Below, one piece after another: positions 19,919-60,924 of a DNA stretch of 64,000 nt. A model generated the notes under the pieces. It did no database searches. It was not told the DNA's origin and saw nothing but the letters and a program-made list of their open reading frames with translations. The first letter of the stretch is position 1. Every line of letters begins with the position of its first letter. A program made the position numbers and the translations under genes. Source of the stretch: Octopus bimaculoides (taxonomy: Eukaryota); NCBI RefSeq assembly GCF_001194135.2, contig NC_068991.1, positions 72,448,039 through 72,512,038 on the forward strand. Direction: 5' to 3'.

Positions 19919-21055
19919 CCTTGCAGTTGATGTATTTCCCATATGAAGGAAATGTGGTAGTTAGAACAGAATAGCTTTTGGTGCTGTGAAACATCTGCAG
20001 GACTGAGCATGTTTGAAGGACAGAGGAAAGTTAACTGGCAAGAGAAATACTCTGTCCACAGTCCCCAAAACTGAAATACAAAGATATGGCTGAATCTAAC
20101 ATGAAGAGACTGGACGTTGATATTTGTAACTGGACTGGGGACCAGTTCACTTTTGATGCCCTTGATATGACCTACAACATTGGGGACTATAAATGGATTT
20201 ACCTGTGATGCATAATTTTGCCTCCTTATTAATGGATATGAAGCTGAATCGAAACAAATGAATTTAAAAAGTACTTTTTATTGGATCTTTGAAACACATG
20301 TTTGATAATATATTTTTCATATAAAGAAAATTTGGTAGTTATATAAAAAAAAACCACATAGGCAGCTGCTGCAAGGAAAGAAAAATACCAATGTTTTGAA
20401 CTCAGGCTCTTTCTCAAGGGAGAAAAGAGAGATAGTTCCTTATGTTGTTACCCAGGAGTCACAGTACTAATGGCCTCATGGCATCTACATATGATTTCAG
20501 TAACTACTTCTTTTTCTTTGGATTACTTGTTACCAATGCAAACCTACACGGGATTCCTCCAATTCTGGATTTTACATACTTACCTTATGATTTCTTCTCT
20601 ATCATTGAATCCACAACCTCTCGTATCCATATGCTTCTTTTATTCTTGTTTCAACAAATTTCATTTGGATTCAGACTTCTCCAAAAAATATCTTTTTGCT
20701 CATATATTCATTCTTGGACCTTTTTTTTTTTTTTTGGTAATTTTACAGGCAAAATAAGAAGGGAGTTTCATGAAGCTCTCGGTATCTGTTAACATGCAAA
20801 CTTTTTATCTGTTAATATGCAAAGCTTCTCACTAATATGCTCCGTGTATTTCTCTGTTGGGAGCAATTTCATATAAAACATTCTATGTCACATAATACAA
20901 TTTGGCAGCATTTATTGATGTAAGTGGAATCTAATGTTCAAAAGAAATCCAGAGAAAATCCTGTGTGGTTGGATCAGTTATTTAGATCAATAAATACTGA
21001 TTGTAAATTGATTGTACTATTTAATATTTATTTATTTATTTTCTTTTTACTTCAG

Positions 21056-21124
21056 GGAGAAAAGTATGATGGCAGGAAAGCTGATGTCTGGAGCTGTGGT
21101 GTGATATTATATGCACTTCTTGTG
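21056..21124 (+). CDS. BRSK2: BRSK kinase exon (69 nt), [23 protein letters not shown] (subdomain IX)
   Basis: Pyrimidine tract ttttctttttacttcag acceptor and gttagt donor; phase 0-0; DVWSCGVIL motif, visible inside ORF 20924..21151. Confidence 0.97.
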
Positions 21125-21905
21125 GTTAGTCTAAATTTAGATTGTCATTAAGATAGCTTTTAACGAATGGCAAGAGAGTTTTTTCTCCAACTTTGCAGTA
21201 CATTGTGTATTGAAATTTTAATTAGTTATGATTTAAATTAAATTTTTTTATGTTCAATTTTTCTCTGAATCAAATGAAAATAATTGTTAAGATTCTTGTA
21301 TATTCTTAGTTAATTTAACTGATAATTAAGATTAGAGTCTCATTTTTTTTTTTTGATAATAATTTTGTAGTTTCTGTTTTGCTTCTTCCAAGCTGATAAC
21401 AATAACAAACATTTTTATTCAAATTCAAGATTCACAAGAATTATTTTATTTATTGTTTAAAAATCAATTATGCATTAATAGTACAATGTGATGTTGTAGA
21501 GTCCAACTTGAGTACGTTTTTTCCTTCTTTATTTCAAAAAAAAAAAAAAAAACTTTTCATTTCCCTTGAAATATTTCTAAGAGTTATTGTTCCATAATTC
21601 TAGTGAATTCTGATCAAATAAACTGGTGGTACATCAGCACATGACTTCATAGATTTCTTTCTCAGCATATCCCTCTCCTGCCATTACATGTCTTGCTCTA
21701 ATCTGAAGACAAATGGTAATTCAATTCCAATTCTAGGCATTTGTATTGTTTGATATATTTTGTGGAAAGTAGACTAGTCAGGGATCCCCTGCTGTCTCTC
21801 TTTGGAATCGGCACCGATTCAGCTTGGGGTTGTTACTAATCTAGGGTGTGAAGCAGCTGTGTGTGCTGATAGGACTTTCATGGTCTGTTAGTGGCATGAA
21901 TGTCT

Positions 21906-22536: not shown

Positions 22537-23112
22537 AATAGGGAGATTGGAGAACCAAGGCAAAAGAAAATTCTGCTTAATATTTGATGCACAAGAACTC
22601 TCACCTCTAAAAATATACCCAATTTGTGCTCTGGAAAGAAAACAAAGTAAATGCACAATTATTTGCTTTTGTATGACATTAAATTAGAATAATTAGTGGA
22701 CAAATGAGTCTACGGTATTTAATTTAGTCCTTCTGTTGTTGAGAGTTCAAATTGTAATAGGCTCTGTTTGACTTTCCATTTACCCATTAGAAATACTTTA
22801 AATGAAATACATTTTGATATATATATCACTAGGTTACCATTAACGCCTGTAGAAAGCTGCAAACATTAGGCCCTTAAAAATCCAAAATTTTATCCCAGCA
22901 CCTAATTTTCTTAAATTAGACAGTAAAGGAGAATTTGGTACTAAACCGATAGAATCAAAATCATAGCTTATGTGTCTTTTGTCTCTTGACATTTTATTTT
23001 TTTTATTTTTAGTCTTTTCTACTTGTAAGATTCTTGTATGGTTTGATTCATTGATTTGACCATATTAGCTCAAACAAACTGTATTCTAAATACATTTCTG
23101 TTTATTTTAAAG

Positions 23113-23259
23113 GGTGCCCTTCCATTTGATGATGACAATTTAAGAAATTTATTGGAAAAGGTTAAGAAAGGTGTCTTTCACATTCCCCATTTTGTGCCTC
23201 CTGATTGTCAGAATCTATTACGAGGCATGATCGAAGTGGATCCTGAAAAACGTTTAACG
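23113..23259 (+). CDS. BRSK2: BRSK kinase exon (147 nt), [49 protein letters not shown]
   Basis: tttattttaaag acceptor and gtattt donor; phase 0-0; BRSK-typical LPFDDDNLR and [14 protein letters not shown] motifs (inside ORF 23056..23283). Confidence 0.97.
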
Positions 23260-24269
23260 GTATTTAAACAGTTTCGTCTCTAAATAAAACAAAACTTTTT
23301 TATTTTAAAGATTTTCAAATCAAAACTCTATAAGAAGTCCAGATAATATAATTTTGTTTATTTATTTCAATTAATAATTGCTTTATGTTTTGATTACTTA
23401 AGCAATGTTTTGATAATTAACATTAAAACAATCAGCGCAAAATTAAAGACAGGTAATTATATATCCCGAAAGAATTTCCCATAGCTGCTTTGCTCTTGTT
23501 AAGATTGTAGTATTTATGTGATGATAAAATTACCTGTCACTTAGTAACGAATTGATTATACCCAATGGAAAAATAACTACTTTATCCCTTTTTTTTAAAA
23601 ATCTTGTGATAAAATTTGATTTATTGAATGACAGTGACATTGTTATTTCTTACAATGGCTGCAATAGAATCTTCTAACTTCACTCTCTCTCTCTCTGCTT
23701 GCCTGCATATTCATGCCTACAGCCATTTACAATTGCGGATCTCCATGCCAAAGCCAGGAGATTCATGATTTTTCTTTGGAAAGATACAACAATGGTTTTC
23801 CATTGCCTTCGACTGGTTTGCATACAATCTACTTTGGTAACATCCGATTCTCTTGAGTTAACTTTGAGCCTCAGAATCTGTTTAAATCTTAAACAGAGAA
23901 ATTAGTTCATGTAACACCAAGACATGTCCAAACACTGTTGGATCTGTGTGACACATGTCTAGGGGCCAGTGTTTCTCTGAGTCCTTGATGCTTAGCCACA
24001 TAACCATGTTCTGCTATTTAACCCACATTTGGGATCCCTGGTAGGTACCATGACTCCAGGCTAGAGCAGGTCTGAGAGTAATGGTGACAAAGGGGTAACT
24101 CCATACTCCCCATAACTTCAGAACCACCCAAGCTCTAGCCTCGTTACTTGATGCAATTTAATATCTTATCCAAGATTAACTTCTGACATCATTGGGTCAA
24201 ATTCTTGTTGGAGATTTTATCAAATGTGGTTTGTATTGAAATAAATTAAGTCCAGGTAGTTGTTGATCT

Positions 24270-25519: not shown

Positions 25520-25554
25520 TTAGAAGAAATTCATCGGCATCCATGGGTAACAGC
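25520..25554 (+). CDS. BRSK2: BRSK kinase exon (35 nt), LEEIHRHPWVT(A): end of the kinase domain
   Basis: ttcttttgttattttatag|TTAGAAGAAATTCATCGGCATCCATGGGTAACAGC|gtgagt. Gives the AMPK-family I..HPW motif in frame; ends in phase 2. Too short for the ORF track. Confidence 0.92.
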
Positions 25555-28580: not shown

Positions 28581-30012
28581 NNNNNNNNNNNNNNNNNNNN
28601 NNNNNNNNNNNNNNNNNNNNNNNNNNNNNNNNNNNNNNNNNNNNNNNNNNNNNNNNNNNNNNNNNNNNNNNNNNNNNNNNNNNNNNNNNNNNNNNNNNNN
28701 NNNNNNNNNNNNNNNNNNNNNNNNNNNNNNNNNNNNNNNNNNNNNNNNNNNNNNNNNNNNNNNNNNNNNNNNNNNNNNNNNNNNNNNNNNNNNNNNNNNN
28801 NNNNNNNNNNNNNNNNNNNNNNNNNNNNNNNNNNNNNNNNNNNNNNNNNNNNNNNNNNNNNNNNNNNNNNNNNNNNNNNNNNNNNNNNNNNNNNNNNNNN
28901 NNNNNNNNNNNNNNNNNNNNNNNNNNNNNNNNNNNNNNNNNNNNNNNNNNNNNNNNNNNNNNNNNNNNNNNNNNNNNNNNNNNNNNNNNNNNNNNNNNNN
29001 NNNNNNNNNNNNNNNNNNNNNNNNNNNNNNNNNNNNNNNNNNNNNNNNNNNNNNNNNNNNNNNNNNNNNNNNNNNNNNNNNNNNNNNNNNNNNNNNNNNN
29101 NNNNNNNNNNNNNNNNNNNNNNNNNNNNNNNNNNNNNNNNNNNNNNNNNNNNNNNNNNNNNNNNNNNNNNNNNNNNNNNNNNNNNNNNNNNNNNNNNNNN
29201 NNNNNNNNNNNNNNNNNNNNNNNNNNNNNNNNNNNNNNNNNNNNNNNNNNNNNNNNNNNNNNNNNNNNNNNNNNNNNNNNNNNNNNNNNNNNACAACAAC
29301 AACAACATCAGTAACAACAGTTGATTGAATGTTAAGTATGTTGGTTACTTAAATTTTCATGAGAAATAGATTTGAAATTATATATATATATTTCCAGTAG
29401 TGGACTGGCCAAGTTGCCAGCTTGTCTGATGGCATGTGGGCCACTGCACCGTTAGAACCCATATATGGGGGCTCATCCCCACAATAAACTACTTATTATA
29501 ACAATCCAAATGTTCATCTGTTAGAGGAGTTGTGGCCCTTGTTGTCATGGCAAAATATATTACTTTGCATTTTCATCTCTCCAAGTTCATATTTACATTA
29601 GTGTGTATATGTGTGTGTGTGTGTATATATATCTAATGTAGGGGTTTATATTCTAGGCGTGTTAGGTGAGCCCTGAAAAATTTGATAAATAGGATAGATT
29701 TTCTTTATGATAATTCTGTTGTTGCAATATCATGATATAATCTGGTCAGAATTTGTTTTGAAATGCATGTCTACCTTACATTATAGGAATGATGCATTTC
29801 TGTGAATATTAATCTAAAGTGGAAGTTCATAATGTTAAAACCGATCTCCTTAATAATGTCCATGTAATATGGGTATCAATGGAAAAATAAGTTTTGTGGG
29901 ATAGAATTTTTGTTATGGTAAAATTTTTAGGAGTACAATGCTTCTGTAATGTGGACGATGCCTGTGTAATAATACACACTTGGAAACAAAATATGAATCA
30001 AGATGAAGTTAT

Positions 30013-32293: not shown

Positions 32294-33266
32294 ACCACAT
32301 TTTTGGTTTGAAACTTAGTCACTCGTTTCTCCTTCACTGATTTTTAGCTTTCAGTTTTCTTGAAATTGTTGTTTAGCAAATTTCATATTCCATTTTTTTA
32401 TCAGAAAACGGTGACCTCTGTTTAGCACTGAATGGTTTATATTGAATTGGTCATCATTAAATTTTGTTTGAATATTAGAAATTGACTTATTTAGAAGCCG
32501 AGAAATAAATATTTCTGGTGACCATTTTATGCATAATCTAAGTGCCTGATTTTGAATTGTTTTACACTGTCATTGACTCTGCAAAATATACTTAAGTACT
32601 CCAAGCTTATATGTAAACAACTCTCAAGTATATCCTTGAATGGACAGCTTTTCACAGAAAAGTGTCCTAGTATTGTTTCTCATACAGAATAACAAATAGC
32701 ATTACAGGCAATCACTGATTTTGAACTTCAGTTTTCTTTGTTTAGTAGATTTCATGTACTGTGTTTGATGGTATGTAAGATGCAAATATTTTTTTTTGTT
32801 TGTTTCCAAAAGTATATCTCAAAATGCCAGCCCCACAATACTATATGCAAAGTTGAGCCTGTATTATATACTTTAATGCATTAAAAACTTTCTTCCGCTG
32901 ACATTGGGGTACCTCAAATACATCCATTCATTTTTATGCCATCTAATAAACAGATGGTGACCTCTGTCATCGAACAGTTTATATCGAATTAGTAGTCACT
33001 AAATTCTGTTTAAACATTACAAGTTGACTTATGTAGAGGCTAATATGTATCTCTGTTGACTGTATAACACTGGTTAAAGCTTTTTTTTACATTAGGCAGA
33101 CCATAGAAATTCTTTCAAAGGATTTTGTATCAACTGACTGAGCTGGTCAATTGCTACCACTACACTTCTTCATTACATTTGATATTGTCCCTGGTTGAGT
33201 ATCTCCACTTTCTACATTCCTTGGTGTTTTAGAAGTCATTCATTGTTGTCACTGCATTTGTTCTAG

Positions 33267-33311
33267 GTGGAATATAGTCGGCAGTAAGTATCACAGAAGA
33301 AACCTCGCAAG
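33267..33311 (+). CDS. Candidate cassette exon (45 nt, phase 2-2), (A)WNIVGSKYHRRNLA(x), in the kinase-UBA linker
   Basis: actgcatttgttctag acceptor and AAG|gtaaat donor; length divisible by 3; open only in phase 2 (the other two frames hit TAA/TAG); downstream ACTAAC 33338-33343 and TGCATG 33359-33364. No transcript evidence available. Confidence 0.55.
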
Positions 33312-33642
33312 GTAAATAGAAAGGGCAAACTTAACGAACTAACATTCCAGGTGTGGGCTGCATGGTTTTGAATATGGTTTCTGTTTTCATTAATCTAATG
33401 TTACTGAAAAATCAATCACTGCAATTAACTTTCCATCGAGCTCTCCAGAATGGTCTAAGTGACAGACAGGAATGCCATGAGAGTGGGGAGTGAGGGGTGC
33501 TTATATTACTGAGTCAGGCATGTTTGTGTTGCAACAATCTCATAAATTCTCTTAAGATAATTACGAAGCTGTAAACTTTTTTGTTTGTTTCTGGTGAACA
33601 AACACTTATTAATGGGATTCCACAGTATTCATCATCATACAT

Positions 33643-33808
33643 AGGCGTAGAAGTGACTGTGTGGTAAGTAGCTTGCTTACCAACCACATGGTTCCGGGTT
33701 CAGTCCCACTGCGTGGCACCTTGGGCAAGTGTCTTCTACTATAGCCTCAGGCCGACCAAAGCCTTGTGAGTGGATTTGGTAGATGGAAACTGAAAGAAGC
33801 CCGTCGTA

Positions 33809-33887
<79 letters not shown>

Positions 33888-34100
33888 TTGTGTGTCTGTG
33901 TTTGTTCCCCCCCCCACATCGCTTGACAACCGATGTTGGTGTGTTTCCATCCCCGTAACTTAGCAGTTTGGCAAAAAGAGACCGATAGAATAAGTACTAG
34001 GCTTACAAAGAATAAGTCCTGGGGTCGATTTGCTCGACTAAAGGCGGTGCTCCAGCATGGCCACAAGTCAAATGACTGAAACAAGTAAAAGAGTAAAGAG
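33643..34100 (+). mobile_element. Family B CORE-type tRNA-derived SINE, full length, with an internal (TA)n(TG)n
   Basis: gtgactgtgtggtaag A-box-like, gggttcagtccca B-box, CORE-like gtggcaccttgggcaagtgtctt, tail agtaaaagagtaaagag. Confidence 0.9.
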
Positions 34101-34449
34101 TATATATGTATGTATGTATGTATGTGTGTATGTATGTACATACATGCACTCATTTATCTCTTTAATCATTAACTTTCACAGGGAAACTGTTCACAGTGAC
34201 TTTGAAGTTCCAGTTTGTTTATCTTTACAGTCTGATGAAGGTGAACAAGCTGAAACTTCAGCCATTTCCTCGTCAAAGTTAATAGACATGTTTTCTACTG
34301 AAAGTATTGAATAATCCATCAGGTTAATGCGAAATTGGTTTTATACATAACTTGACATAAAAAAGAAAACAAATGTTAATACACACACATGTGTGAATGT
34401 GTTTGTGTGTATATACACAGACATGTATGTACACACACACGCACACACA

Positions 34450-44497: not shown

Positions 44498-45327
44498 NNN
44501 NNNNNNNNNNNNNNNNNNNNNNNNNNNNNNNNNNNNNNNNNNNNNNNNNNNNNNNNNNNNNNNNNNNNNNNNNNNNNNNNNNNNNNNNNNNNNNNNNNNN
44601 NNNNNNNNNNNNNNNNNNNNNNNNNNNNNNNNNNNNNNNNNNNNNNNNNNNNNNNNNNNNNNNNNNNNNNNNNNNNNNNNNNNNNNNNNNNNNNNNNNNN
44701 NNNNNNNNNNNNNNNNNNNNNNNNNNNNNNNNNNNNNNNNNNNNNNNNNNNNNNNNNNNNNNNNNNNNNNNNNNNNNNNNNNNNNNNNNNNNNNNNNNNN
44801 NNNNNNNNNNNNNNNNNNNNNNNNNNNNNNNNNNNNNNNNNNNNNNNNNNNNNNNNNNNNNNNNNNNNNNNNNNNNNNNNNNNNNNNNNNNNNNNNNNNN
44901 NNNNNNNNNNNNNNNNNNNNNNNNNNNNNNNNNNNNNNNNNNNNNNNNNNNNNNNNNNNNNNNNNNNNNNNNNNNNNNNNNNNNNNNNNNNNNNNNNNNN
45001 NNNNNNNNNNNNNNNNNNNNNNNNNNNNNNNNNNNNNNNNNNNNNNNNNNNNNNNNNNNNNNNNNNNNNNNNNNNNNNNNNNNNNNNNNNNNNNNNNNNN
45101 NNNNNNNNNNNNNNNNNNNNNNNNNNNNNNNNNNNNNNNNNNNNNNNNNNNNNNNNNNNNNNNNNNNNNNNNNNNNNNNNNNNNNNNNNNNNNNNNNNNN
45201 NNNNNNNNNNNNNNNNNNNNNNNNNNNNNNNNNNNNNNNNNNNNNNNNNNNNNNNNNNNNNNNNNNNNNNNNNNNNNNNNNNNNNNNNNNNNNNNNNNNN
45301 NNNNNNNNNNNNNNNNNNNNNNNNNNN

Positions 45328-49600: not shown

Positions 49601-49957
49601 TTAGTACTGACTGTTTTGAAAAATGTATCTTTTTTTTAAAATTTATTTTTAATTAGGCAATTAAATAAGATATGAATAAGAAATACACAGGAAAGTGACT
49701 AACAATCGTAAATAAAGAATACAGAATATACATCCATTTAAATAAGACAAAATATCTTTAAATATTTGGACGAGGAGAATAAATATATTTTCATTTAGAT
49801 TCCCATATTGTGGTATTTTCAAGCTCATGCTGTCATATAAATGCGAAAAAAAAAAAGAGAAAGAATAATATTTAAAAAAAAAAATCAATGCAAAATATTT
49901 TATTTACTTGTTGGAAATTTTTGTTACATGGGTAAGTCATATTTTTCTCCCATTTAG

Positions 49958-50008
49958 ACTGCAGATAAATCGTAGATCACAATTACTGTCTGCGATTGGG
50001 GTGACAAG
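49958..50008 (+). CDS. Candidate cassette exon (51 nt, phase 2-2), (A)LQINRRSQLLSAIGVT(x), in the kinase-UBA linker
   Basis: atttttctcccatttag acceptor and consensus AAG|gtaagt donor; length divisible by 3; open only in phase 2; ACTAAC at 50076-50081. Confidence 0.6.
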
Positions 50009-50539
50009 GTAAGTTGCATATTGCTTATCAACTCGGTGTGATATTCTCTTTTGTGTGAACTTGTCATTTCTGTGGACTAACAATTCACTTGCCATTTGAA
50101 TTGCCATTCTCAGAACTGATACAGTTCATACTTAGAACTCAAATCATATAAGCTCGCATTCGGTATCAACAAAGAGTGTTTTAATTTTAGTGCTAAAAAT
50201 AGAACTGAATTATGATTTAAAAAAAAAAAAAAAAAAAAAAGCAGGTAAAAATTCAGCTAATAAGGTGGATGTGAACGATCCTCGAAATTTTGAGCCATTT
50301 ACATTTGTGGTAATAATTATTATTTCGTAAATTGTTAATTTCCAAAATTTGTGCTTTGTTAAGCACAGAACAATTTGATTTGTTATTCAGTAAACCAGCA
50401 TGTAATCAAGGCTACTGTTTTTGGGTCAATATTCTGTTTGTATGCCTTGCTTAGCCTATAACACCACATTGATACAGCAGAACAAATACATACAGATGTG
50501 TACATATATATATGTATATATACATATGTGTGTGTGTGC

Positions 50540-57695: not shown

Positions 57696-59419
57696 CTAAT
57701 ATATATATACATAGAAAATAAAGGAAATCTCGAATGCAGGATAAATTGGAAAGTAGCTTAGAAGATCAGGTAAATATGCTTAGAAGAACCCTGTACCTCT
57801 CAGATTCCAGTTGAGCACTCATTAAGTTAAGTAATATCTGACAACAAATGCTATATTCTATAATGCGAAATAATAGCTTTTGGAATTTGAGACCATTTTT
57901 TATAAACAAACTTAGAAGTGCTGAGTGAGTTGGTATTTTACAGAGACAGATAGAAATCTTGAACACATGATAGCTGTGAAAACGGTTTAGAAGATTGGGT
58001 AAATTCTCTTACAAATAAGGAGTTATTTAAAGCTTGGGTATACACCTGGTAGTATGCCAATTAAAGCACTTTCATTGTCTATGGCTACCTGTTGTCGTCA
58101 TCCACGGTAATGATATAAATGCCACTGGATCTACCTCAGGAATTCCTCAGTTTTTGTCAAGAATATAAAGAATGAGAGAAACAGAAACTAGAATTCACAA
58201 GAGTCTTTATTAATCACAGTGATTTTCTTGACCCCTCTTGCATCGATCTCTCACAGGGGTGATAATACGCAACTGGTTGTGGTGCATCCTTCAGAGCAAA
58301 TGTGTCTCATCAGGTGACTTGTCAAAAGTACCCTGAGCTTATTGAACAAGGAACCTTTTGATGATAAAGGTGATGATGATGATTATGATGTAATACTAAG
58401 ATCAAAGAACTGAATATCCTTAGGCATTGCCACACAATAAAAATAATGCCCTCTTTTCCCTTTCTCCATCTCTAAAGCCAAATAGTTTTTCTTGTAAGAT
58501 AAGTGTGGTTAAAAACTTTGCCTTCTAATCATGTGGTTTCAGGTTCAGTCCTACAGTATGGCACTTTGGGCATATGTAGTTTACATTAGCCAAGGCCAGT
58601 CAATGGAGCATGAGTGAATTTGGTAAATGTGTCTGTGTCTGTGTGTGCATGTGTATATGTGTGTATCTGTATCTATCTATAAAGATAGATCTATTTAAAT
58701 ATACATACTGTAGAATGCGAAATTCATTTATCTGAACAGCAAGTAAGGGTTGGTGACAGGGAGAGCATCTGGCTTTAAAATCATTCATCATCCTAAAATG
58801 CATCTCCATCCAACCCATACTAACATAGAAAAAACAGATGTTAAACAAAAATAAATGAACAGACGGACATGTGCATGAACAAAATGTCTTCAGAAAAAAA
58901 GAAAAAAAACTACTGGAAATAGCTTCACAATAAGTGCAAGCATAAAAAAAATAGTATCCCAATTGTTTCCATATTCCATTCTCTGTAGCTGAGAACAGCA
59001 TGTATCCTTATTGCAATATTTAAAAATATTACCATGTGTGACTCTCAATTTGTATTTCCCCCCTCACTTGGAAGCTTTCTATCTCTCTCACCCTCTTTCT
59101 TTCTCCCTCTCTCACTTTCTTTTTGTCTCTTCCTCCTTATTTTTCTCTCTCTGCCTCTATGTTCCCTTCAATTTCATCCATCTTGTCGTTGTCTCTCTCT
59201 TACTGTTTGTCTCTCTGCAGCATTCATATCCTGGTGAAAAACTCAGAAAATTCCAGCCAAGATAGCATCCTTCTTTGATTAGGTTTATTTTCTCCCATCA
59301 TTGTCAAATATTTTGCATAGTAATTGCATTAACTTTTCAAACCATTCAGACTTGTTGATTTGTGTTGATATAGCAATGTGTAAGTCTGTATATATATATA
59401 TATATATATATAATCATAA

Positions 59420-59767: not shown

Positions 59768-60509
59768 NNNNNNNNNNNNNNNNNNNNNNNNNNNNNNNNN
59801 NNNNNNNNNNNNNNNNNNNNNNNNNNNNNNNNNNNNNNNNNNNNNNNNNNNNNNNNNNNNNNNNNNNNNNNNNNNNNNNNNNNNNNNNNNNNNNNNNNNN
59901 NNNNNNNNNNNNNNNNNNNNNNNNNNNNNNNNNNNNNNNNNNNNNNNNNNNNNNNNNNNNNNNNNNNNNNNNNNNNNNNNNNNNNNNNNNNNNNNNNNNN
60001 NNNNNNNNNNNNNNNNNNNNNNNNNNNNNNNNNNNNNNNNNNNNNNNNNNNNNNNNNNNNNNNNNNNNNNNNNNNNNNNNNNNNNNNNNNNNNNNNNNNN
60101 NNNNNNNNNNNNNNNNNNNNNNNTATATATATATATATATATATACATGGTAATTTTCAATGCTGGCTCAGAACTCAATAGAAAATACATAGAGATAAAC
60201 TTAAAAATGAAAACAATCCACTGCCATCACAAAAGCTAAGAACAATGTTGATTTGTAAACCTTTAATATACTCGGCAGTATATTTTGGTTGCAAATGAAA
60301 TACAGTGTCCCTTGCTACACTCAAACACAACCACACACATATATACATATATACGACAAGCTTCGTTTAGTTTCCATCTACCAAATTCCCCCAAGAGTTT
60401 GCTTAGCCTGAGGCTATAGTAGACACCCAAGGTGTCATGCAGAAGTACTGAACTTGGAACTCTGTGGTTTGGAATGTGCTGCTTCTAATGCAAAATTTGA
60501 ATCTGTGTA

Positions 60510-60569
<60 letters not shown>

Positions 60570-60924
60570 NNNNNNNNNNNNNNNNNNNNNNNNNNNNNNN
60601 NNNNNNNNNNNNNNNNNNNNNNNNNNNNNNNNNNNNNNNNNNNNNNNNNNNNNNNNNNNNNNNNNNNNNNNNNNNNNNNNNNNNNNNNNNNNNNNNNNNN
60701 NNNNNNNNNNNNNNNNNNNNNNNNNNNNNNNNNNNNNNNNNNNNNNNNNNNNNNNNNNNNNNNNNNNNNNNNNNNNNNNNNNNNNNNNNNNNNNNNNNNN
60801 NNNNNNNNNNNNNNNNNNNNNNNNNNNNNNNNNNNNNNNNNNNNNNNNNNNNNNNNNNNNNNNNNNNNNNNNNNNNNNNNNNNNNNNNNNNNNNNNNNNN
60901 NNNNNNNNNNNNNNNNNNNNNNNN

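What the first reader, a model, noticed from the sequence alone, without database searches (positions are those of the whole stretch)
33267..33311. Candidate 45-nt in-frame cassette exon in the kinase-UBA linker with splicing-factor motifs
Seen: tag acceptor, AAG|gtaaat donor, 45 nt, and only the phase-2 frame needed after exon 25520-25554 is stop-free (WNIVGSKYHRRNLA). A TGC sits at -14 (33253-33255), ACTAAC at +27 and TGCATG at +48. Known: UGC near the 3' splice site is the SRRM3/4 (eMIC) enhancer, ACTAAY is bound by QKI/STAR proteins and TGCATG by RBFOX; in AMPK-related kinases the UBA domain packs on the kinase domain. Inference: a tissue-regulated, probably neural, insert that could tune SAD/BRSK activity. 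I do not recall such an insert in vertebrate BRSKs. An internal GCA|gtaagt donor at 33284 would give a frame-shifting 17-nt form.
Basis: partly seen in the sequence, partly recalled or inferred. Interest (0 to 1): 0.75.

Follow-up and report, generated by a model that had tools for sequence, protein, structure and literature searches.

The report
Real alternative exon pair in SAD/BRSK kinase
The predicted 45-base exon is really spliced into the messenger RNA of a brain-type (SAD/BRSK) kinase gene.

Summary
Exon 33267-33311 (45 nt, tag|...AAG|gtaaat) is open only in the frame set by upstream exon 25520-25554, and all quoted motifs sit where stated.

- **RNA evidence.** One contig from RNA run X11 (same organism as the window) joins 25554|33267 and leaves at exactly 33311. 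It does not go to the next constitutive exon. It enters a second in-frame exon, 49958-50008 (51 nt, tag|...AAG|gtaagt), and only then the constitutive exon (AGATGTTCAAGG..., not in the window).
- **Product.** The 96-nt insert encodes WNIVGSKYHRRNLARLQINRRSQLLSAIGVTR (7 K/R, no D/E), placed right after the kinase-domain end HPWVTA.
- **Sample dependence.** X11 also holds the skipped form, with inclusion at roughly 30%. Three other RNA runs that express the gene show only skipping.
- **Conservation.** DNA of the other organism labels laid on it shows no listed difference across 33236-33370 (complete for C, D and E; F incompletely listed), against about 9.7% divergence in the flanks. This island holds TGC(-14), UAAC-GA-ACUAAC(+21/+27) and UGCAUG(+48).

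RBFOX or STAR-type control is plausible. SRRM3/4 dependence is weakly supported. Neural specificity could not be tested because tissues are coded. The functional effect on UBA autoinhibition is inference. I file it as a new member of a known kind, of moderate interest.

The parts
25520..25554 (+). Upstream constitutive exon (35 nt, LEEIHRHPWVTA, ends in phase 2; donor GC|gtgagt)
   Evidence: Contigs of X13, X10, X11 and X5 cover it and splice from 25554.
33169..33434 (.). Conserved island around alternative exon A. Its core, 33236-33370, has no listed substitution in the four other organism labels laid on it (listing shown complete for C, and consistent for D and E; incomplete for F).
   Evidence: for the positions of differences; one search shows all 6 sampled 31-mers of 33240-33340 in DNA runs of organisms C, D, E and F; 2 substitutions in 266 nt against 37 in 382 nt of flank.
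33253..33255 (+). TGC at -14 of the acceptor, a candidate SRRM3/4 enhancer motif. It is weak evidence on its own.
   Evidence: TGC occurs 13.9 times per kb in the window. It lies inside the conserved core.
33267..33311 (+). Alternative exon A, the finding: 45 nt, phase 2-2, encodes (A)WNIVGSKYHRRNLA(R)
   Evidence: X11 contig positions 31-75 match 33267-33311 with 0 mismatches. The loose end before it is the end of exon 25520-25554. The loose end behind it is the start of exon B.
33284..33289 (+). Internal GTAAGT that would give a 17-nt frame-shifting form. No use was seen.
   Evidence: the 17-nt form runs into stops. The X11 contig runs through it unbranched.
33332..33343 (+). UAAC-GA-ACUAAC: a STAR/QKI-type core with an adjacent half-site, at +21 to +32 of exon A
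   Evidence: Only 11 ACTAAC occur in the whole window. It lies inside the conserved core.
33359..33364 (+). UGCAUG, the RBFOX consensus, at +48 of exon A
   Evidence: 0.89 per kb in the window. It lies inside the conserved core.
49958..50008 (+). Alternative exon B, new here: 51 nt, phase 2-2, tag|...AAG|gtaagt, encodes (R)LQINRRSQLLSAIGVT(R)
   Evidence: X11 contig positions 76-126 match it. The loose end before it is the end of exon A; the loose end behind it is AGATGTTCAAGG..., the constitutive next exon.
50076..50081 (+). ACTAAC at +68 of exon B

Best explanation
The window carries part of a SAD/BRSK (AMPK-related) kinase gene on the + strand. A very long intron of more than 38 kb follows exon 25520-25554.

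**Anatomy.** That intron holds two small symmetric (phase 2-2) cassette exons: A (33267-33311, 45 nt) and B (49958-50008, 51 nt). In a subset of transcripts both are spliced in together. This inserts 32 residues, WNIVGSKYHRRNLARLQINRRSQLLSAIGVTR (net charge about +7, no acidic residue), directly after the last kinase-domain motif HPWVTA. The insert sits in front of the acidic flexible linker (DVQGQIELEL...) that leads to the UBA domain.

**Regulation.** Inclusion depends on the sample: roughly 30% in one run and undetected in three others that express the gene. It is most likely driven by intronic enhancers in the conserved block just downstream of exon A. The candidates are UGCAUG at +48 (RBFOX) and UAAC-N2-ACUAAC at +21/+27 (STAR/QKI-HOW family), with a further ACUAAC at +68 of exon B.

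**Likely effect.** The insert probably lengthens and recharges the tether between the kinase domain and UBA. In mouse SAD-A the UBA alpha3 helix docks on helix alphaC, and the AIS binds the KD-UBA junction to inhibit the kinase (PMC4686854). The insert could therefore tune autoinhibition. It could also add a basic docking, localisation or phosphorylation patch (the RRS site).

**Shown versus inferred.** Shown: the exon boundaries, co-inclusion, reading frame, coexistence with the skipped form, and DNA conservation. Inferred: the regulators, tissue specificity and biochemical consequence.
For: - **Gene identity.** tblastn and protein hits are 84-91% identical to proteins that sources name BR serine/threonine kinase.
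- **Spliced path.** One 156-nt X11 contig covers 25525-25554 | 33267-33311 | 49958-50008 | AGATGTTCAAGGTCAAATAGAATTAGAGTT with 0 mismatches. All three introns have GT-AG ends.
- **Skipped form.** The junction 25554|AGATGTTC... is present in X13, X10, X11 and X5.
- **Inclusion level.** In X11 the depth over 25524-25547 is about 19. That equals the 9.15 upstream contig, plus the 3.16 inclusion contig, plus about 7 left for the skip contig, so inclusion is about 30%. X13 (depth 29), X10 and X5 each have a single unbranched contig across the skip junction.
- **Frame.** Both exons are 3n and stop-free, and either alone would also stay in frame.
- **Conservation.** There are 0 substitutions in 33236-33370 and 2 in 33169-33434, against 37 in 382 nt of flank. 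P(0 in 135 nt) is about 1e-6.
- **Motifs.** All lie inside the island. ACTAAC occurs only 11 times in 64 kb, yet lies within 70 nt downstream of both exons.
- **Not another kind of element.** There is no Rfam match and no unusual RNA structure. DNA depth is flat across the exon, so it is not in a repeat.
Against: - The spliced form rests on one low-depth contig (3.16) in one run.
- It was not seen in five other RNA runs of the same organism (X13, X10, X5 at exon A; X9, X12 at exon B). The only RNA contigs found in organism C (X36, X38) are unspliced and colinear with the genome.
- Contigs show presence, not absence, so the inclusion figures are rough.
- With no substitution in exon A, coding constraint cannot be separated from constraint on splicing signals.
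- No protein in the 5.8-billion-protein collection shares three 5-residue words with the insert plus its flanks. The organism's own BRSK also seems absent from that collection, so this says little.
- The insert is not an amphipathic helix and matches no solved structure, so no structural mechanism is indicated.
- In mouse SAD-A, linker point mutations had little effect on basal activity (PMC4686854).
Confidence: 0.6

Rival explanations
1. Stand-alone 45-nt neural microexon driven by SRRM3/4 (eMIC). Exon A would be included on its own in neurons through the UGC at -14 and spliced straight to the constitutive next exon.
For: A TGC lies at -14, inside the conserved block. Exon A alone would stay in frame (...TAWNIVGSKYHRRNLARDVQ...). 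The gene belongs to a brain-enriched kinase family (my own knowledge). UGC close to the 3' splice site is an eMIC-exon feature (PMC8797185).
Against: The only transcript evidence links exon A to exon B, with no branch at 33311 in the contig. The exon is 45 nt, longer than the 27-30 nt usually taken as the microexon limit (my own knowledge). The nearest upstream AG is at 33234-33235, about -32, so there is no long AG-exclusion zone, and there is no UCUC-rich tract (compared). TGC is common here at 13.9 per kb. Tissue could not be read.
Confidence: 0.12
2. Splicing noise. Two cryptic pseudo-exons in a very long intron are occasionally used and have no protein function. The conserved block around exon A is then an unrelated intronic element, such as a transcriptional enhancer.
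For: There is one contig at depth 3.16 in one of six runs of the organism. The intron holds 502 open AG...GT segments. Organism C RNA shows only unspliced sequence here.
Against: Inclusion of about 30% in X11 is high for noise, while X13 at three times the depth shows none. Both exons are 3n and stop-free in the one frame that matters. They are two of only three segments in 38 kb that pass a strict splice-site filter. The conserved island is centred on the exon and its splice sites.
Confidence: 0.12
3. Recursive-splicing exon. Exon A serves stepwise removal of the >38-kb intron (AG|GT at its start), and its appearance in mRNA is a by-product.
For: The intron is very long; the next constitutive exon is not in the 38 kb that follow. 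Exon A begins with GT directly after the acceptor AG (tag|GTGGAA). The intronic conservation would fit a recursion site.
Against: The regenerated donor AGC|GTGGAA lacks the +4 A and +5 G of the consensus, so it is weak (consensus from my own knowledge). Exon B begins ACTGCA and has no such site. The in-frame, stop-free coding of both exons is not needed for recursion.
Confidence: 0.06

Closest known systems
RBFOX-activated cassette exons (downstream (U)GCAUG enhancers)
   Same: There is a UGCAUG 48 nt downstream of the exon A donor. It lies inside a block with no substitution in related organisms. The exon is short, in frame, and in a neuronal-type signalling gene.
   Different: There is a single motif, not a cluster, and none near exon B. 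No binding, knock-down or tissue data were available here.
STAR-family (QKI / HOW / ASD-2) regulated exons with downstream ACUAAY elements
   Same: A core ACUAAC with a UAAC half-site 2 nt away lies at +21/+27 of exon A. Another ACUAAC lies at +68 of exon B. The hexamer is rare in the window, at 11 copies.
   Different: The role of such elements is known from vertebrates, flies and worms (my own knowledge), not from this organism. Conservation of the exon B copy was not tested.
Neural microexon programme (SRRM3/4 eMIC domain; PMC8797185)
   Same: There is a UGC close to the 3' splice site, and the exons are short, symmetric and modify a signalling protein outside its folded domains.
   Different: The exons are 45 and 51 nt rather than 27 nt or less. 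There is no long AG-exclusion zone and no UCUC tract. Neural restriction is not shown.
Known SAD/BRSK isoforms (C. elegans SAD-1 long/short; mammalian BRSK1/2 C-terminal variants)
   Same: This is the same kinase family, and alternative splicing changes non-catalytic regulatory parts.
   Different: As far as I recall, those variants differ at the C-terminus. Full-text searches for BRSK with 'microexon' and for SAD kinase / BRSK1 / 'splice variant' listed no paper whose title or abstract describes an insert between the kinase domain and UBA; only one hit was opened, and its BRSK passages do not mention one. Here the change is at the kinase-domain/UBA linker.
CaMK-type regulatory segment immediately after the kinase domain
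   Same: The position is the same, directly after the HPW motif at the end of the kinase domain in a CAMK-group kinase, and the segment is basic.
   Different: There is no amphipathic-helix signal: the 18-residue helical hydrophobic moment is 0.28, and 1823 of 2000 shuffles reach it. There is no sequence match to any solved structure. I rejected it as a model.

Membership tests
SAD/BRSK kinase gene (AMPK-related, CAMK group) | Kinase-domain sequence closest to BRSK/SAD | tested here: met
   Exon translations are 75-100% identical to a human BRSK2 sequence that I wrote out from memory. The best database hits are 84-91% identical, and several are named BR serine/threonine kinase.
SAD/BRSK kinase gene (AMPK-related, CAMK group) | UBA domain after a short linker, then AIS and KA1 | not tested
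   The downstream exons are not in the window. Only the first 30 nt of the next exon were read. They encode DVQGQIELEL, which resembles the ELELELP linker of invertebrate BRSKs that carry PF21115.
Alternative cassette exon | Both splice junctions of the exon seen in RNA, with canonical AG/GT | tested here: met
   The X11 contig has 25554|33267 and 33311|49958, with tag and gtaaat at the exon ends.
Alternative cassette exon | Skipped form present in the same organism or sample | tested here: met
   25554|AGATGTTC... is present in X11 as well as in X13, X10 and X5.
Alternative cassette exon | Reading frame preserved | tested here: met
   45 + 51 nt with no stop; the frame rejoins DVQGQIELE.
SRRM3/4 (eMIC)-dependent neural microexon | Length 27-30 nt or less | tested here: not met
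   The exons are 45 and 51 nt. They pass only under the broad 51-nt definition.
SRRM3/4 (eMIC)-dependent neural microexon | UGC close to the 3' splice site | tested here: met
   For exon A, TGC at 33253-33255 (-14) is conserved. For exon B there is none within 60 nt upstream.
SRRM3/4 (eMIC)-dependent neural microexon | Long AG-exclusion zone and a UCUC-rich tract | tested here: not met
   The nearest upstream AG is at 33234-33235 (about -32), and the tract is tcattgttgtcactgcatttgttc. The features are those listed in PMC8797185.
SRRM3/4 (eMIC)-dependent neural microexon | Neuron-restricted inclusion that depends on the eMIC factor | not testable with these tools
   Run tissues are coded, and no perturbation data exist here.
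RBFOX-activated exon | (U)GCAUG in the proximal downstream intron, conserved | tested here: met
   TGCATG at 33359-33364 (+48) has no substitution in organisms C, D and E, and no listed difference in F. The chance of one within 100 nt is about 9%, given the window density of 0.89 per kb.
RBFOX-activated exon | Inclusion depends on RBFOX, or follows its tissue pattern | not testable with these tools
   No such data are available.
Recursive-splicing exon | A strong 5' splice site regenerated at the acceptor (AG|GTAAGT-like) | tested here: not met
   Exon A has tag|GTGGAA, a weak match. Exon B has tag|ACTGCA, no match.

The most novel reading that the evidence does not exclude
The two exons form a lineage-restricted switch in these organisms (probably octopods). 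It places a +7-charged, acid-free 32-residue segment at the kinase-domain/UBA junction. That junction is where the SAD-specific autoinhibitory sequence docks (PMC4686854). The insert could therefore produce a SAD kinase isoform with altered autoinhibition, or one targeted to membranes or the nucleus, in particular cells. Combinatorial use (+15, +17 or +32 residues) would give graded states. No comparable insert turned up for BRSKs in the limited literature search here, nor do I recall one.
Probability: 0.15. Interest if true: 0.6.

Novelty: new member of a known kind. Interest (0 to 1): 0.4.

Why it matters
SAD/BRSK kinases control neuronal polarity and presynaptic organisation. [quoted passage not shown]

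A conserved, sample-dependent insert at exactly that junction would be a natural handle for studying how linker length and charge affect autoinhibition. It would also be an example of animals with large nervous systems diversifying a signalling kinase through small exons.

The result also shows that reading splice signals from raw sequence picked a true exon. A simple strict filter then recovers its partner exon 16.6 kb away. If gene annotation lacks these exons, both should be added.

Tried and rejected
- **Next constitutive exon and UBA exons.** I looked for them in the window with tblastn, using human and invertebrate linker/UBA peptides, and with an exact pattern search. They are absent. 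They lie beyond 64000 or in one of the ten N gaps.
- **Insert in other proteins.** A search of 5.8 billion proteins with the insert plus its flanks found no candidate. The PDB sequence search gave nothing.
- **Calmodulin-binding or autoinhibitory amphipathic helix.** I rejected this: the helical hydrophobic moment is no better than in shuffled sequence.
- **Structured RNA or known ncRNA as the reason for the conserved island.** I rejected this: there is no Rfam match, and the fold z-score is +1.9.
- **Repeat or transposon origin of exon A.** I rejected this: DNA depth is flat at single copy across 32912-33630, while real repeats lie at 32828-32911 and 33640-34175.
- **Spliced form in a second organism.** Only unspliced contigs were found in organism C (X36, X38). 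Nothing lay on the stretch in X53 (organism B) or in the 2% sample of X64.
- **Lost read-laying runs.** Conservation of exon B therefore went untested.
- **An alternative exon at the same place in another animal.** P0001 looked like one, but L001 shows an unspliced 46-nt genomic intron read through by the gene caller.
- **Literature.** No opened paper describes an insert between the kinase domain and UBA in BRSK, and none of the listed titles or abstracts does. The 2026 preprint that uses Octopus bimaculoides tissue splicing has no supplements held.

Full report
**1. What is in the sequence.**
- 33267-33311 is a 45-nt segment preceded by ...cactgcatttgttctAG and followed by GTAAAT.
- The upstream exon 25520-25554 reads LEEIHRHPWVTA and ends with two bases of a codon (GC|gtgagt).
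- In that inherited frame the 45 nt read A-WNIVGSKYHRRNLA. The other two frames contain stops.
- TGC lies at 33253-33255 (-14), ACTAAC at 33338-33343 (+27) and TGCATG at 33359-33364 (+48).
- A UAAC half-site lies 2 nt in front of the ACTAAC.

**2. The gene.**
- tblastn with a human BRSK2 sequence that I wrote out from memory found + strand exons at about 3842, 21047-21142 and 23104-23262 (75-100% identity), plus HPWVTA at 25538.
- A database search with the joined exon translation gave hits that were 84-91% identical. Several are named BR serine/threonine kinase.
- In invertebrate relatives HPWVTA is followed by GGKGELELELP... and the UBA domain PF21115.
- None of those downstream exons is in the window. 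The window has ten N gaps.
- The organism is coded.

**3. RNA evidence.**
- Four RNA runs of the window's organism (X13, X10, X11, X5) carry contigs that splice 25554 to AGATGTTCAAGGTCAAATAGAATTAGAGTT. This reads ...TA-DVQGQIELEL and is the constitutive continuation.
- X11 has a second contig of 156 nt at depth 3.16. Its first 30 nt are 25525-25554 and positions 31-75 are 33267-33311 without mismatch.
- The 81 nt after that begin ACTGCAGATAAATCG..., which is not the constitutive exon.
- That sequence lies at 49958-49987 in the window. It belongs to a 51-nt segment, 49958-50008, bounded by tttctcccatttAG and GTAAGT.
- Laying X11 on that place shows contig positions 76-126 on 49958-50008. The last 30 nt are AGATGTTCAAGG..., the constitutive exon.
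- The full path is therefore 25554 | 33267-33311 | 49958-50008 | constitutive exon. That makes three GT-AG introns and 96 added bases.
- The contig spans exactly 30 nt of each constitutive exon, as expected for an alternative branch of a k=31 graph. It is unbranched at 33311 and at 33283. In that run I therefore see no 45-only form, no 51-only form and no 17-nt form. This is an inference from how contigs are built.

**4. The product.** The inserted form reads ...HPWVTA-WNIVGSKYHRRNLARLQINRRSQLLSAIGVTR-DVQGQIELE. Either exon alone would also stay in frame, and the 17-nt form runs into stops.
- The 32 residues hold 7 K/R, 1 H and no D/E.
- They do not form an amphipathic helix: the best 18-residue helical moment is 0.28, reached by 1823 of 2000 shuffles.
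- They match nothing in the PDB, and no protein in the large collection shares three 5-residue words with the query. That collection also appears to lack this organism's own BRSK, so the negative result says little.

**5. Regulation across samples.**
- In X11 the depth over 25524-25547 is about 19. That is the 9.15 upstream contig, plus the 3.16 inclusion contig, plus about 7 left for the skip contig, so inclusion is about 30%.
- In X13 (depth 29), X10 (9.8) and X5 (11) one unbranched contig crosses the skip junction, and nothing lies on exon A.
- X9 and X12 have nothing on exon B.
- Contigs show presence rather than absence. Even so, 30% against undetected at three times the depth points to sample-dependent inclusion. 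Which tissues these runs are cannot be read here.

**6. Conservation.**
- DNA runs under four other organism labels (C, D, E, F) hold all six sampled 31-mers of 33240-33340.
- Laid at 80% likeness, organisms C and D give one contig across 32800-33630 with 48 and 46 substitutions plus indels. No listed difference falls between 33236 and 33370.
- An RNA-run contig of organism C (X36, unspliced, 33128-33479) has exactly the 12 differences listed for the DNA. The list is therefore complete for that range.
- Organism E has one difference (33371) in 33236-33402. Organism F's contig has 9 differences that the table did not list, so its positions are not fully known.
- Counted for organism C: 37 substitutions in 382 nt of flank (9.7%) against 2 in 33169-33434. 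P(0 in 135 nt) is about 1e-6.
- The island is centred on the exon. It covers both splice sites, the TGC, the UAAC/ACUAAC and the UGCAUG.
- It is not a repeat, since DNA depth is flat. It is not a known RNA family and not unusually structured (z +1.9).
- With no substitution inside the exon, synonymous bias cannot be assessed.
One search is uninformative on other species.

**7. Splicing in other organisms.** In organism C only unspliced contigs cover exon A (X38; X36). X53 (organism B) and a 2% sample of raw reads from X64 (organism H) gave nothing. Conserved splicing is therefore not shown.

**8. Candidate regulators.**
- UGCAUG occurs 0.89 times per kb in this window, so one within 100 nt has about a 9% chance. 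Its place inside a substitution-free block raises its weight.
- ACTAAC is rare, at 11 copies in 64 kb. It lies at +27 of exon A and +68 of exon B, which is about 2% chance for each 100-nt window.
- TGC is common, at 13.9 per kb.
- eMIC-dependent exons are described as having long AG-exclusion zones, UGC near the 3' splice site and UCUC-rich tracts (PMC8797185). Exon A has only the UGC, its nearest upstream AG is at about -32, and it is 45 nt long.
- I therefore rank RBFOX and/or STAR-type control above SRRM3/4. All three remain inferences.

**9. Likely consequence.**
- In mouse SAD-A a flexible linker joins the kinase domain to UBA. UBA alpha3 displaces helix alphaC, and the AIS binds the KD-UBA junction. 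Linker point mutations had little effect on basal activity (PMC4686854).
- A 32-residue basic insert at the start of that linker, next to an acidic stretch, most plausibly changes tether length and electrostatics. That would alter the strength of autoinhibition. It could also add a basic docking, localisation or phosphorylation patch (RRS).
- This step is inferred and nothing here tests it.

**10. Rivals.** The report sections give details for each.
- The stand-alone SRRM4 microexon is disfavoured by the linkage to exon B and by the failed eMIC features.
- Splicing noise is disfavoured by about 30% inclusion, the double in-frame design and the exon-centred conservation.
- A recursive-splicing exon is disfavoured because tag|GTGGAA is a weak regenerated donor and exon B has none.

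**11. Chance and method.** Open AG...GT segments are plentiful, with 502 in the 38.4 kb after 25554. Only three pass a strict splice-site filter. Two of them are exons A and B, and the third (58257-58313) is untested.

**12. Verdict.**
The exon is real, in frame and in the linker. It is half of a two-exon insert, and its regulators, tissue specificity and effect are unproven.
- It is a new member of a known kind, small regulated coding exons in a neuronal signalling kinase. The full-text searches listed no paper describing such an insert in BRSKs, although only one hit was opened.
- Interest is moderate.

Noticed in passing
It is co-included with the 45-nt exon in the X11 contig.
   Followed up: yes
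window 58257-58313: A third segment passes the strict filter: 57 nt, cacag|GGGTGAT...ATCAG|gtgact, open in the same frame (GDNTQLVVVHPSEQMCLI). It is not part of the X11 contig, and there is no RNA evidence for it.
   Followed up: no
window 33640-34175: A very high-copy repeat. RNA-run contigs pile up to summed word depths of about 1e5 to 1e6, with hundreds of internal joints and many variants, and the region includes TA/TG-rich tracts. It is probably an abundant transposable element or satellite-like sequence.
   Followed up: partly
window 32828-32911: A short dispersed repeat. DNA depth rises 10- to 30-fold in all four other organisms, with many contigs that continue into unrelated sequence. 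A 12-nt insertion (TGAATTTCTGCT) relative to the window follows 32896 in the orthologous contigs.
   Followed up: no
window 50009-50120: In RNA run X14 (organism B) a 204-nt contig starts exactly at 50009, the first intron base after exon B, and runs into the intron. This could be an excised-intron (lariat) 5' end or coincidence. RNA runs X53-X56 of organism B hold all sampled words of 49915-50075, which means unspliced RNA.
   Followed up: no
window 25555 to beyond 64000: The constitutive exon after 25554 (AGATGTTCAAGGTCAAATAGAATTAGAGTT...) is absent from the window. The intron is therefore longer than 38 kb, or the exon lies in an N gap. Ten N runs exist, for example 28581-29292, 44498-45327, 59768-60123 and 60570-60924.
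   Followed up: partly
window 33235: Organisms C and D have G>A plus an inserted A here. This removes the nearest upstream AG (33234-33235) in front of exon A's acceptor and marks the 5' edge of the fully conserved core.
   Followed up: no
L001 1380-1817: The best protein hit, P0001, is a gene call on a genomic contig of an AT-rich animal. It reads through a 46-nt intron placed after HPW-G(TA), about two codons upstream of the intron position seen here. It is not an alternative exon.
   Followed up: yes
The cause is unknown, possibly low-complexity sequence.
   Followed up: no
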